NCBI RefSeq assembly: GCF_037042905.1
Contig: NC_087247.1
Location: forward strand, 24,304,001 to 24,368,000
Direction: 5' to 3'
DNA: 64,000 nt
Source: Lytechinus pictus
Lineage: Eukaryota
Shown here: positions 8,268-55,548 of the stretch, one piece after another
Numbering within the stretch: position 1 is the stretch's first letter
Layout of the letters: each line of letters starts with the position of its first letter
Made by a program: the position numbers and the translations under genes
The notes under the pieces: generated by a model
Told to the model about the DNA's origin: nothing
The model's database searches: none
The model's input: only the letters and a program-made list of their open reading frames with translations

Positions 8268-8717
8268 TATTATAGTTTGTGCAATTTTTACTATGCTTAT
8301 TTTATTATTTTTTGTTGTTGCTTTGCTCTGCTTTATTGGGTTTAGTTTAATTTTGGCCATTGATTAAGTTTTTAAATTTAGTTTAGTTTTAATTTTAGAT
8401 TAGGATTATAGAATACAGCCTACTTATGTTAGTAACGTTAGAAATCTAAACGTATTATTGTATTTCTGTGGCCCTGGTAGAGGCGAGTATATTGTTGGAC
8501 AGTTTAATAGTTACTTCAGTACAATTGGATCCAAACTTATAACTAGTTACCATCGAGCGACTTGCATTTTTCATTTTTATGAAAAGAAAAATAGATCATT
8601 CCATGATCTAAGATAAATGTCTAGTTTTCAAGTTAAAATATCAAAAAAATTCTGCTCGCACTTCGCGCTCGCGTCAATTGATTAGTTCGAAACCAATTTG
8701 TTCACGGTTACAAAAAG

Positions 8718-11700
8718 GGTGACCCGACAATTGCTCCGCCGACATCTGCTCCGCCGACAATTGCTACGCAAAATAAGACAGTTGCTCCGCCGACAATTGC
8801 TCCGGACAATTGCTCCGCCGACAGTTGCTCCGTCGACACTTGCTCCGCCGATATGTGCTCCGTCGACACTTGCTCCGCCGATATTTGCTCCGCCGATATT
8901 TGCTCTGCCGACATGTGCTCCGCCGACATCTGCTCCGCCGAAAATTGCTCCGCCGACAATTGCTCCGCCGATAATTGCTCCGCCGACATCTGCTCCGATT
9001 ATACGACAATTGCTCCGCGACAATTGCTCCGCCGATATTTGCTCCGCCGACATCTGCTCCGATTATACGACAATTGCATGAACATCTTATTTCTCCAAGT
9101 TGGTCTATGTTAAATGATAAGAAATTCATCCTGATACAAATTGTTTTGTCGTTGTCTTGTTTTTGTTATTCGTTAATGTTTTATTTATTTTATTCTCCCC
9201 CTATCATCACAGCTTTCTGCTTAAAAAACAAAACAAATTGTTCTCCCTGCCGCTGCCACTTGACAAATTGTAACGGAGAAGGGGAATGACACACTCCCCA
9301 TTGAAATTGTGAATCAGGATTTTTGTTCATATATTATTATCATTGGTTTCACTCCGGTCTTGAGCGGGGAGAGAATTTGGGGGGGGGGGGTGCTGGACAC
9401 AATATCTCTTCTGCTTTCCAGCAACTTATACACCATACATTCGCGCGGGCTCTCTCTCTCTCTCTTTCTCGTTTTGTTCTTTCACGTTGTTTATTTTTAT
9501 TGGTGACCGCTTGATTTATTGTATATTTATCAGTATTATAATTATTAATATTTGTATCAATAATTTTTATTTACGTCTTCGGCCTTATCTACCCTTGCAC
9601 TTTTTTTTCCTTCAATTTGTTTCAAACGAAAGTATGATCATCACTGGCGTACAGATGGGGGAGGGGCGTGCTAGGGGTCACGGATCCCCCCATTCTCCCT
9701 ACCAATGAAAAAAAAAAGAATAAAGGAAAGGAAAATAAATGTCATTCTTGTCTCGCCCCCTCCATTTTTTGTTGTTGGCTCATTACGCTACTGGTGAGTT
9801 ACTATAAAACTAGACTTCGGTTGTATTTTTGTTCTATTCTGTGCAATAGCGACAATATAAATATATTATAATAAATGAATATATGTATGTATCTCTCTCA
9901 TTACGTCTAAACAAATAATGTTATTTTTAAAAGACAATAATATATATACCAGCAATAATATAGTTACAAATTCATGAAACCCAATACGCATCTCACTGAA
10001 TTTATAATGCGAGCACAAAGCACGAGCTGTTATTGACATGGAAAGGGGACATTTATACGCCTATTTAAAATTGTAAACATGAAGCATATCTCGGGGGGGG
10101 GGGGATATCTCGTAAAAGAAATGAGAGCACGATGCGATAATTTAATATTTTGGATATATTTACCAGAGTTACAATTCTATATATTTCTTTTTCTTTGTGT
10201 TATTTCTTTCGACAAACTGTAATTGAAGTATTGAAGAGTATATAGGATGTTATGCCTGCTGATCATGATAGAATGTGGATTATTTTGCTGATTCATTAGA
10301 TCTTAACATGTGTTCTTTAAATTTGGTAATTTGGGTACATGTTAGAAACACAGGCATTGTGCATTCAGATGCACATTGTGGAAATGAGATTCAGTATTCC
10401 TTGCAGCTAAGAAAGGTTTTAAAAATGACACTACTCTCAATTACATGTATACTATGTCCATAGTTGCGACTTGCGAGTGTGTGAAAATGAAGGTGTTTGC
10501 AGTCATTAAAGTGTAGTTTTGGTTGGAAAACGTTAATAAAACTGTCGAGAACGTACAGTCTTCATGATTTCATTTATCTCATGTTATGATCAGTAAATCA
10601 AATAAAAAATTATAATGACAAGAACTTGTTAAGTTTATCCTTCTATTTCAATCCCATGAATAAACAGAAATCGCGATATTCAGAAATAATAAGTCATACA
10701 CCTCCTATTTTCCTCAAGCTCTCACTCACTCCCCCTCTTTCTCTCTCTCTCTCTCTCTCTTTCCCTCCATAACCCTTTTCACAATCATTTTTGTTTGATT
10801 TCCGCATAATCAAAACGATCGACGACGACAATGATAATGATGGTGATGATGAAGATGCTGATAATGATGCTGATGATGATAATGGTGGTACAATGATAAT
10901 GATAATAAGTACATGAACACACGTTTTCTTCTCATATAGTTCATTCTTGGAAAATACATAGGCGGCCATATACACATGAAGGTATATCATTTATAGAAGA
11001 AAATCTTGTTTGATTGATTTTTTTATTTTTTGAAACTACGTGTAAAATTATATCCCCCATCAACAACAAATTGTTACTTACATTATAACATCATAATGAA
11101 TATAATTCGACTATTGGCGGACCATATTTAGATTTAGATTAAGATTTATTCATTTTCCGTTCACAAAGCACAACAAAATCAAAGTAACAATACATAGTCA
11201 AATTTAAAGTACAATATCAATCGGTATAATGCATAAGAATTAGAACGTATAAACAATGAGAACTAATGCGAACTAAAGTAACCTTGACTAATAACTATAT
11301 AAAACAGAACATATGGATTTTATTTTTGGATTATTAAAAAAAAAAAATTATCCTTTTGCTATCAGTGAAGAAAACAATCATGATCAACATAAAACAAAAA
11401 AGCAACTCACTATTATTTACAGTATTATCATAATCTAAAAACCTACGGTGTGTATGACATGATGTGGATGTTGAGACCATGCAGACTGAGAGCACTGTGT
11501 GTACGATAGGATATGGAAACCAGAGTGGAGGGGTGTGCCGAGAAGGTGACACGACATGTAGCCTTTCACAAGTTGGTATTTTCTTGAATATAAATTTTTA
11601 CTTACTGAATGTCTTGGTCATGTTTGTATGGCACAAAATTTGCCGACAGTAAACATTTTGCGTGACTACAGTACAGGTTTTCGACAAAATAAGGTGGGGT

Positions 11701-12537
11701 ATACCGTTGAATTTCACCTGGAGCAAATGTCTCCACTTCGGAGCATATTTCGCCAGTCTGAGCGATTTTGACGCTAAGAATGGGGTATGTCTAATTTGTT
11801 TCTACTGTTATAACATGGAGCTATATGGTTATAATAATTACATGAAAACGCGTTTTTTTTTTTTTTATCGCCAGGCACGTAATAAAACTTACACAAATGC
11901 TCCCCCCCCCCCCCCATCATGAATAAGCATTAAGAATATCTATCCCTCCTTTGTGCTTACCCCTTTTTTTCTATTTCTTTCTATATGCATGTATCAGGGG
12001 CCGCGGAGCCGGGGGGCTTTAGCCCCCCAATTTTCCAAAGCCGTGTACAAAAAACGTAAGAATGACCATATGATTGTGATTTTTAGCATGGACAGCCCTC
12101 ACTTTGAAAACCGTTCCGCGGCCCCTGTGTATGACATTTAATATATCATGCAAGCATAGTTTAAGTTTACTTTGTAAATTCATGGAGCTATATGCTCCAT
12201 GGTAAATTGACGCCTTCAGCCTGTGCTAAAATTGTTATGCGTATGAAAGTACGAATAAAAAAATAAATAAATAATTGTCGCATTATCGGAGCAATTTACG
12301 GCGGAGCAGATGTCGGCGGAGCAATTATCGGCGGAGCAATTGTCGTATAATCGGAGCAGATGTCGGCGGAGCAAATATCGGCGGAGCAATTGTCGGCGGA
12401 GCAATTTTCGGCGGAGCAGATGTCGGCGGAGCAAATATCGGCGGAGCAAATATCGGCGGAGCAAGTGTCGACGGAGCACATATCGGCGGAGCAAGTGTCG
12501 ACGGAGCAACTGTCGGCGGAGCAACTGTCATGGAACC
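8718..12537. mobile_element. TU-type foldback transposon with 15-bp tandem-repeat inverted arms
   Basis: Left arm 8718-9076 is (GACAATTGCTCCGCC)n; right arm 12273-12537 is its reverse complement; termini GGT...ACC; perfect 8-bp TSD ACAAAAAG at 8710-8717 and 12538-12545; no transposase ORF inside. Confidence 0.88.
11995..12127. mobile_element. Short hAT-like MITE nested in the foldback element
   Basis: TIR CAGGGGCCGCGGA...TCCGCGGCCCCTG; TSD not clean. Confidence 0.5.
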
Positions 12538-12545
12538 ACAAAAAG

Positions 12546-13260
12546 TGCTTATAATATCCAGTTCTTAGGCCGGATTATTAACAATTTCAGCTCGCGTTTC
12601 GTGCTCACATAACTGTTTAGGTATATTCATCCTGTTAATAGTTAAATGAAGTGCTTAGAATGTCCGGTTTTTAGGTCGGAATATAAAAAATCAAAAATAT
12701 CAAAAATATATCATTAGAAACAAATTTGTTCACGGTTACACAAATTGCTTAGATCGAATATCAAGTTCTTTGGTCGGAATATCAAAAATTTCAGCTCGAG
12801 CTTCGCACTGGCATAAAATTCCACCCTGTTCATAATTAAATGAAGTGCTTAGAATGTAAAGTTTTCAGGTCGAAATATCAAAGATTTTCTTATCGCGCTT
12901 CGCGCTCACACCAATTAATTGTTTTTGACTACCATCTTGTTCATAGTAAAAAAAAAAAGAAAAAGGTGCTTAGAATGTCCAATTTTCAGGGGGGAATATC
13001 TAAAATTTTCAGCTCGCTCTTTGCGCTCGCACCAATTAAATATTCAGTTAGAAACCATTTTGTTCATGGTTACTAAAAGTTTTAGCTCGCGCTTCGCGCT
13101 CGCACGACTGTTTAGATACCCATCATGTAAAACTGTTTAGAATGTCTAGTGTCCAGATAGGAATATCAAAATGTTTAGCTCGCGCTTCGCGCTCGCATAA
13201 TTTGTTAAAGAACCCATCCTATTTATAATTAAGTGCACAAAATGTATCACTTCGAAAATT
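12546..13260 (+). repeat. Degenerate tandem repeat containing GCTCGCGCTTCGCGCTCGC (host of the foldback insertion)
   Basis: Several units with AAATTTCAGCTCGCGCTTCGCGCTCGCA and AAGTGCTTAGAATGTCC. It continues on the other side of the foldback at about 8615-8717, and related units lie at about 55060 and 55440. Confidence 0.7.
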
Positions 13261-53479: not shown

Positions 53480-55548
53480 GATGGAATGATTAGATGCATT
53501 ACCATAGACAGGGCTGCGGGAGTAGGAGAATACAGAATAAGAGTATGAACTCAAGACAGTTGAAGAGGTAAAGACTAATAGTAATACTTAGTCGATCTGA
53601 TTTGTTTGATTTTAAAACTCTATCAACATGATGATGATCAACAGTCAAGTTAACTTTATTTATAGCAGCAATTAATGCAGCATCAATTAGAGCAATCAGT
53701 TAAAACAAAACTATAACCACAAACCAGTCAAGAGATATAAGAGGCAGCCTTTTCTGTCAAACTTTGATTAATACCACTCATCAATCACCATGCAGTTTTC
53801 TCAAAGTCGACAATACATTTCCTTCTAACGTTACGGTACTAATTACAGCAAAAACACATTAATGGGACTGTACATAATTGGAGTTAAAAACAATTTGATA
53901 TTAAATTCTAAATAACAGGTAAACTATTAAAATAGGAATTGATAAAATCTCTTGCATTATCTCTCACATGCAATCACACTTCCAAACTATTTTAAAATGA
54001 CATTTACCTTGCAATTTTGTATAATATTGTGTTTGTTCACAACATATAAATCATTTGCCGACGATACCCGACGAGATCGAGACTGCTAACATTGTTATAA
54101 TTTTTTGGTCTCCGCCTCGCTCTACCGATCCGAATCGGATAGTTGACCGGATATTATAGAACGACAAATCGGCTGTAACTTCATCATGAGCTTCGATCGA
54201 AACGGGGACGCAAGGAGGGGGCAAGGGGAAAATAAGAAAGTTGAAGAGTGAGAGTAGGAGTATGAGAAAGCGGCGAAGTGGTCTTGCACCCCTTCCCCCA
54301 AAAAAAATATAGACAAAAAATCTTCCCACAGAAATGATTTTGTTAGAGGACTAAAAGTCACATGTTGTCTGAAAAAGTCACTTTTTTATCGCTTGAACAT
54401 GACATATAGGGCTTTTTTTTTTGGGGGGGGGGGGGACAGAGCTAGGGGCCATATTTTTTTCATCCCCGATGGTACTGTAAGTAAGGTTATAGGGGATGAG
54501 AGGCCAAATGCCTATTGCATAGTGTTTGTTAAAATGAACCTCGATCCCTCCCGTTCTCTGTTGGGGCCTCCCTCCGGGGCGCAAAGGGGAACATAAATTA
54601 AAGATTGTTACCTAACAAAATAATAGAATATCATCTTCAGAAACTAAAATATACAGAAAAATAAAGGTTAATTGTTATCTCACTAAAGGGCACATTTCGT
54701 TTAGGAAAGGATTTTTCCCCCAATATAATTGTATTTATTTAGGGGTGGGGCAAATTAATTCCCCCGCCGTCTTAATTTTTGCAGAAACAAATGGGCTAAT
54801 TGCAATTTCCATACTTTATGACAGACTGAAAATTTTGAACAAACTAGAAAAGAATAGGGGCTTAATCAAATGTGGAACTTGATCAGAACAGAAACAAAAA
54901 CCGTTAGGCATAGGCGGATCCAGGGGGCGAGCCCCCCCCCCCCCCCCGCCCCTATTGGCGGAGAAAAAAGGAAAAAGAAAATGGGGAAAGACAGGATGAA
55001 ATAAAAAGAGGAATGAGGGCAAGACTTGGAAAATAACAAATTTTTCACATCACTATACAAAATATTTGCTCGCGCTTCGCGCTCGCACTGTTTGATGATA
55101 TACATATTTGCTCAATAGGTTGTTATGGAGCTTAAATTATCAAGTTTTGAAATCAATTTCAGCTCCGCCATCATCAATCTTTCATTATTTTGTTTGATTT
55201 ACAAATTGATTTTTTTTAAGTGCTTTGTCAAATTTCCGTGTTATCGCCGGTCGTGCGATCGCCGCTTATTTTATTGTCTTCTTGTATTCCATAAAGCTGT
55301 CAAACTATTCTTTTTCATGCAGGTCTGATTGTCAAAGCGTATCAGCTATAACGCTGTACGCTCGCACTTATGTATAACACTATATTAATTCTATAACAAA
55401 CTACTTAAAATCCCCTTTTCATGACAGTTTATCAAAAATATAAGCTCGCGATTTGCGCTCGCATTAATTGTAAAAAAAATATGTCAACCTATATGCATCC
55501 TATTCATAATAACAAAAGTGCTTAAAATGTCAAGTTTTCAGGCCTTAA

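What the first reader, a model, noticed from the sequence alone, without database searches (positions are those of the whole stretch)
8710..12545. Complete TU-type foldback transposon with exact 8-bp target duplication
Seen: a 3820-bp element whose arms are inverted arrays of a 15-bp unit, with GGT...ACC ends and ACAAAAAG duplicated on both sides. Removing it restores the host repeat (TTCACGGTTACAAAAAGTGCTT; compare the related unit at about 12729). Known: sea-urchin TU elements are described as foldback transposons with 15-bp tandem outer domains and 8-bp TSDs. To my knowledge their mobilising transposase is poorly defined. This copy lacks a non-repetitive inner inverted domain and encodes nothing recognisable, so it must be mobilised in trans.
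Basis: partly seen in the sequence, partly recalled or inferred. Interest (0 to 1): 0.7.

Follow-up and report, generated by a model that had tools for sequence, protein, structure and literature searches.

The report
Protein-less TU-type foldback transposon copy
This is a real, young, protein-less "foldback" jumping gene of the kind first described in sea urchins in the 1980s, one of a few hundred copies in this genome. It is a well-documented example of a known kind, and the enzyme that moves it is still not identified.

Summary
Window 8718-12537 is a 3,820-bp element. Its arms are inverted arrays of a 15-bp unit (about 22 units on the left, about 16 on the right). Its ends read GGT...ACC, and ACAAAAAG is duplicated exactly on both sides.

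It belongs to a family in this genome:
- 215 5' ends and 241 3' ends match within one mismatch.
- Of 21 full copies examined, 15 have perfect 8-bp target duplications, 4 have perfect 9-bp ones and 2 are decayed. Every duplication has a different sequence.
- The shared 3.2-kb non-coding body differs from its consensus by about 1%, so the burst is recent.
- Removing the element leaves a sequence that aligns without a gap to a neighbouring unit of the host repeat.

No copy examined encodes a transposase. Merlin, MULE, hAT and P domains exist in the genome, but none lies inside about 85 paired elements on contigs C1-C8.

The scan has already reported this family on other DNA of this genome (s1-306824, s1-320086). 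Verdict: a new member of a known kind, of modest interest.

The parts
8710..8717 (.). Left copy of the 8-bp target-site duplication, ACAAAAAG
   Evidence: identical to 12538-12545. The family-wide pattern of 8/9-bp duplications is.
8718..9077 (+). Left (5') arm: terminus GGTGACCC followed by about 22 ordered variants of the 15-bp unit GACAATTGCTCCGCC
   Evidence: The 383-bp arm recurs at 98-100% identity at 8 or more other loci. The 5' end motif occurs 215 times in the genome within one mismatch.
9078..12272 (+). Non-coding middle segment, the body shared by the family
   Evidence: At least 40 copies at 93-98% BLAST identity. Substitution divergence from the consensus is about 1%. No ORF over 98 aa and no Pfam or Rfam hit.
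11989..12174 (+). 186-bp module next to the 3' arm. In other TU-ended elements it lies inverted next to the 5' arm, so it may be one side of an inner inverted domain or part of a second body type.
   Evidence: coordinates compared with the end lists. It occurs once per element in the copies I hold.
11995..12127 (.). Nested 133-bp MITE inside the module, with ends CAGGGGCCGCGG...CCGCGGCCCCTG flanked by TGTAT on both sides
   Evidence: Read. Very high contig depth and many loose ends at 12050, 12096 and 12127 in all runs mark it as a high-copy repeat in its own right.
12273..12537 (-). Right (3') arm: about 16 inverted 15-bp units ending ...GTCATGGAACC. It is shorter than in most copies.
   Evidence: The 3' end motif occurs 241 times within one mismatch. 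Right arms of other copies carry 8-38 units.
12538..12545 (.). Right copy of the 8-bp target-site duplication, ACAAAAAG
8458..8709 (.). Host repeat, left of the insertion
   Evidence: joined to 12546 onward, it aligns ungapped with the paralogous unit at 12714-12885.
12546..13200 (.). Host repeat, right of the insertion (degenerate units of about 150-190 bp)

Best explanation
Window 8718-12537 is one insertion of a young, non-autonomous, TU-type foldback DNA transposon. A DDE transposase encoded elsewhere in the genome presumably binds the reiterated 15-bp units in both arms. It would cut at the GGT/ACC termini and re-insert the element at staggered cuts 8 nt apart, sometimes 9, whose repair gives the flanking duplication. 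What is shown: the anatomy, the copy number, the duplications, the youth of the family, the lack of coding capacity, and the spread of an internally deleted derivative. What is inferred: the cut-and-paste chemistry, the role of the 15-bp units as binding sites, and the enzyme. The enzyme is most likely Merlin (IS1595-like) or Phantom/Foldback-type Mutator, at roughly even odds, with about a quarter left for other superfamilies.
For: - Anatomy and exact duplication.
- Family size: 215 5' ends and 241 3' ends. The reversed-pattern control gave 0.
- Target duplications: of 21 full copies, 15 have perfect 8-bp and 4 perfect 9-bp duplications, all of different sequence, with no target consensus.
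- Empty site: it is restored against the paralogous host unit, and a related organism's contig skips exactly the element plus one duplication.
- Age: the body is about 1% from its consensus, with 2.2% mean pairwise divergence.
- Deleted derivative: the same internal deletion (element positions 1231 to 2807) occurs at two loci on different contigs, C3 and C5, so a 2.4-kb derivative has itself moved.
- No coding capacity: no ORF, Pfam or Rfam signal in the window copy. Longer copies owe their length to a 1.4-kb non-coding module or to a nested LINE.
- No transposase inside: none of 53 Merlin, 17 MULE, 62 hAT and 8 P-element domain hits lies inside a paired element on C1-C8.
- Literature: every Merlin family starts 5'-GG, has 8- or 9-bp duplications, often has imperfect TIRs and sometimes has internal tandem repeats (PMC8101967). 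Muta1, a Phantom-group MULE, makes 8- or 9-bp duplications and has subterminal tandem repeats (PMC5225508).
Against: - No autonomous partner with these ends was found, so the enzyme class is not shown.
- End lists were visible only for contigs C1 to C8/C9 (100 rows each), so a coding copy on another contig is not excluded.
- Only four transposase families were screened.
- No empty allele was seen in same-species runs. Those were contig data with poor coverage of the flanks, so recent or ongoing activity rests on sequence divergence alone.
- That the 15-bp units bind a protein is pure inference.
Confidence: 0.88

Rival explanations
1. The family is a Merlin-superfamily non-autonomous element, moved by one of the recently active Merlin (DDE_Tnp_IS1595) transposases of this genome.
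For: Both ends start GG, duplications are 8 bp with a 9-bp minority, and the outermost TIR is imperfect. These are the non-coding hallmarks of Merlin given in PMC8101967. The genome holds 53 Merlin domain hits. They include three equally scoring copies with open frames and a head-to-head pair at C3:5966636/5969801. Earlier scan notes report that pair as a 19.2-kb palindromic Merlin (s1-317470) and report Merlin-ended foldback MITEs (s1-322105). I did not check those notes.
Against: No Merlin hit lies inside or next to a TU-ended element on C1-C8. The one Merlin-like ORF I could read (L062) has an 'end' starting GGCGGCC, no flanking duplication and no 15-bp arrays. Its partial likeness to the unit is in the opposite orientation and is probably chance.
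Confidence: 0.35
2. The family is a Mutator-superfamily (Phantom/Foldback-type) non-autonomous element, as is proposed for Drosophila FB and the nematode Tm1.
For: Long arms made of subterminal tandem repeats and mixed 8/9-bp duplications are what Muta1 and its more than 300 derivatives show (PMC5225508). MULE duplications span 8-11 bp (PMC6446971). The genome has 17 MULE domain hits, several in open frames of 700-890 aa. Earlier scan notes describe Mutator-type foldback families here (s1-323349, s1-323391); I did not check them.
Against: No MULE hit lies inside a TU-ended element on C1-C8. Most MULE families favour 9 bp or more, whereas 8 bp dominates here (15 of 19 intact duplications).
Confidence: 0.3
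3. The family is moved by a hAT or P/Galileo-type transposase, as the reader suggested from the 8-bp duplication.
For: hAT and P elements make 8-bp duplications. Galileo (P superfamily) has foldback-like arms with many THAP binding sites (PMC3688188, seen only as a listing). The genome has 62 hAT and 8 P-element hits.
Against: Four of 19 intact duplications are 9 bp, which neither family makes as a rule. The termini are GG..., not the (C/T)A(G/A)NG of hAT or the CA... of P (my own knowledge). The targets show no hAT-like nTnnnnAn pattern. No hAT or P hit lies inside a paired element.
Confidence: 0.07
4. It is not a mobile element but a local inverted duplication or an assembly artefact around a minisatellite.
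For: Palindromic minisatellite structures are prone to misassembly.
Against: There are hundreds of dispersed copies with the same asymmetric ends and the same body. Each sits in different flanking DNA with its own 8/9-bp duplication. Independent public runs hold the arms and the body.
Confidence: 0.01

Closest known systems
TU elements of Strongylocentrotus purpuratus (Liebermann et al. 1983, Nature 306:342; Hoffman-Liebermann et al. 1985, Mol Cell Biol 5:991). Details are from my own memory. Only the 1983 citation and 'foldback element in sea urchin' could be checked, in PMC4079207.
   Same: Sea-urchin host, according to earlier scan notes. Long inverted arms whose outer domain is a tandem array of 15-bp units. 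An 8-bp target duplication. A non-coding, modular and heterogeneous middle built partly of other dispersed repeats. Deletion and insertion derivatives.
   Different: A different species, reported as Lytechinus pictus. Sequence homology to TU1-TU4 was not tested. This copy has no paired inner domain. One fifth of intact duplications are 9 bp. The outermost 8 bp of the two ends differ.
Drosophila Foldback (FB) elements and Tetris
   Same: Arms built of short tandem repeats, variable arm length between copies, mostly protein-less copies, and a link between transposon arms and satellite-like arrays (PMC4079207).
   Different: FB makes 9-bp duplications and is linked to a Phantom-type Mutator transposase. 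The unit sizes differ (10/20/31 bp in FB, about 220 bp in Tetris). There is no sequence relation.
Merlin superfamily non-autonomous elements
   Same: 5'-GG termini, 8- or 9-bp duplications, imperfect TIRs, and TIRs of up to hundreds of bp with tandem repeats in some families (PMC8101967).
   Different: No Merlin transposase has been tied to these ends. The arms are longer and more repetitive than in typical Merlin MITEs.
Muta1 (Phantom-group MULE of Aedes aegypti) and its derivatives
   Same: 8- or 9-bp duplications without target preference, subterminal tandem repeats whose number varies between derivatives, and hundreds of non-autonomous copies (PMC5225508).
   Different: No MULE transposase has been tied to these ends, and the host phylum is different.
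Galileo (P superfamily, Drosophila)
   Same: Foldback-like long arms with internal tandem repeats that carry multiple transposase-binding sites.
   Different: Galileo makes 7-bp duplications and has P-type termini. Here the duplications are 8/9 bp and the termini are GG.

Membership tests
TU foldback elements (sea urchin) | Long terminal inverted repeats whose outer domain is a tandem array of 15-bp units | tested here: met
   period-15 arrays at 8724-9061 and 12287-12529, inverted, 91-93% complementary.
TU foldback elements (sea urchin) | 8-bp target-site duplication | tested here: met
   Exact ACAAAAAG in the window. 15 of 21 family copies have a perfect 8-bp duplication and 4 have 9 bp.
TU foldback elements (sea urchin) | Heterogeneous, modular middle segments that include sequences also dispersed elsewhere; deletion and insertion derivatives | tested here: met
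   A 1.4-kb extra module, a nested LINE, a 2.4-kb deletion derivative at two loci, the 186-bp module placed differently in other elements, and 1,457-2,775 first-look candidates for parts of the body.
TU foldback elements (sea urchin) | Inner, non-repetitive inverted domain (class-1 TU elements) | tested here: not met
   There is no inverted pair inside the arms in this copy; only a one-sided module is present. As I recall, class-2 TU elements also lack the inner domain, so this does not exclude membership.
TU foldback elements (sea urchin) | Sequence homology to the published S. purpuratus TU arms | not testable with these tools
   The TU papers and sequences are not in the held library.
Merlin superfamily | Both ends start 5'-GG | tested here: met
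   GGTGACCC and GGTTCCAT (3' end read as its complement) in all 21 copies. Criterion from PMC8101967.
Merlin superfamily | 8- or 9-bp target-site duplication | tested here: met
   15 of 8 bp and 4 of 9 bp.
Merlin superfamily | An autonomous member with the same ends encoding a DDE_Tnp_IS1595 transposase | tested here: inconclusive
   There are 53 PF12762 hits in the genome, none inside or next to a TU-ended element on C1-C8.
Mutator superfamily (Phantom/Foldback type) | 8-11-bp duplication and long TIRs with subterminal tandem repeats | tested here: met
   Criteria from PMC6446971 and PMC5225508.
Mutator superfamily (Phantom/Foldback type) | An autonomous member with the same ends encoding a MULE transposase | tested here: inconclusive
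   There are 17 PF10551 hits, none inside a TU-ended element on C1-C8. The ends of the MULE copies were not readable.
hAT superfamily | Strictly 8-bp duplication, (C/T)A(G/A)NG termini, nTnnnnAn target | tested here: not met
   9-bp duplications in 4 of 19 intact cases, GG termini, and no target consensus.
P superfamily (P, Galileo) | 7-8-bp duplication, CA... termini, THAP-type transposase in the autonomous member | tested here: not met
   9-bp duplications, GG termini, and 8 PF12017 hits, none inside a TU-ended element.

The most novel reading that the evidence does not exclude
The sea-urchin TU foldback elements, which to my knowledge have had no assigned superfamily since 1983, are Merlin-type elements. 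Their GG termini and mixed 8/9-bp duplications would then be the footprint of an IS1595-like DDE transposase. This genome's unusual palindromic Merlin copies would be the autonomous source, and the 15-bp arrays would be multimerised binding sites.
Probability: 0.33. Interest if true: 0.5.

Novelty: new member of a known kind. Interest (0 to 1): 0.3.

Why it matters
On its own this is an ordinary result: a clean, young copy of a long-known kind of sea-urchin transposon, and the scan has already met this family elsewhere in the genome. Its use is as material. The family is young (about 1% from consensus). It has hundreds of copies with intact ends and a deleted derivative that has also moved. 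Its target footprint (8 bp with a 9-bp minority, plus GG ends) narrows the unknown enzyme to Merlin or Phantom-type Mutator. That makes the old question of which transposase moves TU elements directly testable in a laboratory sea urchin. Foldback elements also promote inversions and deletions, so a few hundred young copies matter for genome stability and for assembly quality.

Tried and rejected
1. I first thought the middle segment flips relative to the asymmetric ends, with both orientations among copies. That was an artefact: loci from the genome search are not re-oriented for minus-strand matches. The orientation is constant.

2. I looked for a coding copy among the longer elements.
   - The 5.3-5.6-kb class carries a shared 1.4-kb non-coding module.
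   - The 10.3-kb C6 element carries a nested LINE with RVT_1 and zf-RVT.

3. Whole-genome Pfam scans for Merlin, MULE, hAT and P domains found none inside paired elements on C1-C8.

I did not try to get those letters any other way. The one Merlin-like locus I did read (L062) has no duplication and no TU-like arms.

5. A degenerate end pattern with 3 mismatches only re-listed the known ends.

6. The original TU papers are not held and could not be found by DOI, PubMed id, a guessed PMC id or citing papers.

7. A metagenome scan found two contigs with diverged TU-like 15-bp arms, probably environmental echinoderm DNA. Both are non-coding.

8. Reads gave no empty allele in the same-species runs. 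These were contig data with poorly covered flanks, so they say nothing about absence.

9. I did not use the large protein search.
Full report
**What is there.**
One search shows an element at window 8718-12537 (3,820 bp) flanked by ACAAAAAG at 8710-8717 and 12538-12545.
- The left arm (8718-9077) starts GGTGACCC and continues as about 22 variants of the unit GACAATTGCTCCGCC.
- The right arm (12273-12537) is the inverted array of about 16 units and ends ...GTCATGGAACC.
- Tandem Repeats Finder reports both arrays with period 15 and reverse-complementary consensus units.
- The repeat finder gives arm pairs of up to 199 nt at 91-93% complementarity.
- The outermost 8 bp of the two ends, GGTGACCC and GGTTCCAT, share only GGT and one C.

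Between the arms lie 3.2 kb with no ORF over 98 aa, no Pfam match above noise and no Rfam match.

**It is a family.**
- The left arm recurs at 98-100% identity at many loci, and the middle recurs over its full length in at least 20 copies.
- The 23-nt 5' end occurs 215 times and the 3' end 241 times within one mismatch. The reversed-pattern control gave none.
- Pairing the ends listed for contigs C1-C8 gives about 85 elements. The mode is 4.0-4.2 kb, with classes at 2.4-2.8, 5.3-5.6 and 5.8-6.5 kb and a few longer.
- An apparent flip of the middle relative to the ends was my error, because minus-strand loci are not re-oriented. The orientation is constant.

**Insertion signature.**
In 21 full copies, 15 have perfect 8-bp duplications and 4 have perfect 9-bp duplications. 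In those four the element ends are intact and the 8-bp reading fails. Two more are decayed. All the duplicated sequences differ. Their composition equals the genome background and there is no positional consensus.

**Empty site.**
Joining 8458-8717 to 12546 onward gives a sequence that aligns across the junction, without a gap there, to the neighbouring host-repeat unit at 12714-12885. In Logan contigs of a related organism, one contig joins 8718 to 12547, skipping 3,828 bp, which is the element plus one duplication. Because the flank is itself a repeat family, that contig may be a paralogue rather than the orthologue. Either way it shows the uninterrupted target with a single copy of the octamer. 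Same-species runs showed no empty allele, but they are contig data with poorly covered flanks, so that is uninformative.

**Age and derivatives.**
- The shared body differs from its majority consensus by 0.6-1.6% in 20 copies and by 4.6% in one. Mean pairwise divergence is 2.2%. This is a recent burst.
- Arm length varies from 17 to 31 units on the left and 8 to 38 on the right.
- Two elements on different contigs (C3 and C5, 2,401 and 2,404 bp) share the same internal deletion, so a deleted derivative has itself moved.
- The 5.3-5.6-kb class carries a shared 1.4-kb non-coding module.
- A 10.3-kb copy holds a nested LINE.
- The 186-bp module at 11989-12174, which contains a 133-bp MITE, sits next to the 3' arm here. 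In at least 15 other TU-ended elements it sits, inverted, about 430 bp inside the 5' end. So elements with these ends have at least two body types, and the module may be the remnant of an inner inverted domain.
- Contig depth along the body is very uneven in all runs, as expected for a mosaic of other dispersed repeats.

**Who moves it.**
No copy examined encodes a protein. Whole-genome scans found 53 Merlin, 17 MULE, 62 hAT-dimerisation and 8 P-element domain hits, none inside a paired element on C1-C8.

The literature narrows the field.
- Every described Merlin family starts 5'-GG and makes 8- or 9-bp duplications, often with imperfect TIRs and sometimes with tandem repeats (PMC8101967).
- The Phantom-group MULE Muta1 makes 8- or 9-bp duplications without target preference, and it has subterminal tandem repeats whose number varies among its 300 derivatives (PMC5225508).
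- hAT and P fit poorly: the family has 9-bp duplications, GG ends and no hAT target pattern.

The one Merlin-like locus I did read was uninformative. My estimate is Merlin 0.35, Mutator 0.30, hAT or P 0.07, and the rest to other superfamilies.

**Comparison with what is known.**
As I recall the 1983 and 1985 papers, S. purpuratus TU elements have the following:
- arms with an outer domain of 15-bp tandem repeats;
- 8-bp duplications;
- one class with a common middle and an inner domain;
- a second, heterogeneous class with outer domains only.

The present family fits that description. The papers are not in the held library, so membership by sequence is untested. Only the existence of a sea-urchin foldback element is confirmed, from PMC4079207. 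Two metagenome contigs carry diverged arms of the same unit type and are also non-coding.

**Earlier scan notes.**
The scan has already reported this family on other DNA of this genome (s1-306824, about 240 copies; s1-320086). Other notes name the genome as Lytechinus pictus and describe palindromic Merlin elements (s1-317470, s1-322105). I used these as leads only.

**Verdict.**
It is a new member of a known kind, of modest interest. The open and now testable point is the transposase.

Noticed in passing
window 11995-12127: A 133-bp MITE nested in the element's body, with ends CAGGGGCCGCGG...CCGCGGCCCCTG and TGTAT on both sides (an apparent 5-bp duplication). Contig depth and loose ends mark it as a very high-copy repeat in all runs laid.
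   Followed up: partly
window 8458-8717 and 12546-13200: The host sequence is a degenerate tandem or dispersed repeat of about 150-190-bp units (motif TTGTTCACGGTTACA...TGCTTAGA). Weak copies also lie near 55059-55542.
   Followed up: partly
G000:C28:678316-700511 (L002, L004, L011, L012): Four copies of the element's 5' arm lie about 7.26 kb apart on one contig. The element seems to be embedded in a tandemly repeated 7.3-kb segment.
   Followed up: no
L061:3576-8400 (G000:C6:21298707-21303531): A LINE with a 763-aa open frame (RVT_1) and a 473-aa frame (zf-RVT) is nested in a TU-type element, which makes it 10.3 kb long.
   Followed up: partly
L062:2019-3527 (G000:C10:9580318-9581826): A 503-aa Merlin-like open frame is bracketed by a 19-nt inverted repeat starting GGCGGCC, but has no flanking duplication. 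It may be an old or domesticated copy.
   Followed up: partly
G000:C3:5966636-5970247: Two equally scoring Merlin transposase domains lie head-to-head 3 kb apart, each in a 461-aa open frame. They coincide with the palindromic Merlin element of earlier notes s1-317470 and s1-317526.
   Followed up: no
L063, L064 (metagenome contigs Ga0102810_1016180, Ga0102829_1034279): Two environmental contigs carry arrays of the same 15-bp unit type (76-82% like the arms here) next to non-coding DNA. This is probably echinoderm DNA in a water sample. One end reads TGTGACACGACATTTGCTCC, close to the 5' end here.
   Followed up: partly
window 11440-11800: Two short open stretches have splice-like borders (...ctacag / ...gg|gtatg) and a weak sub-threshold Tudor-like hit (E 0.014). 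This may be a captured gene fragment in the family body, or nothing.
   Followed up: no
window 11989-12174 versus other copies: The window copy and L032 lack about 18-20 bp that most copies have in this module (186 aligned bases against 204).
   Followed up: no
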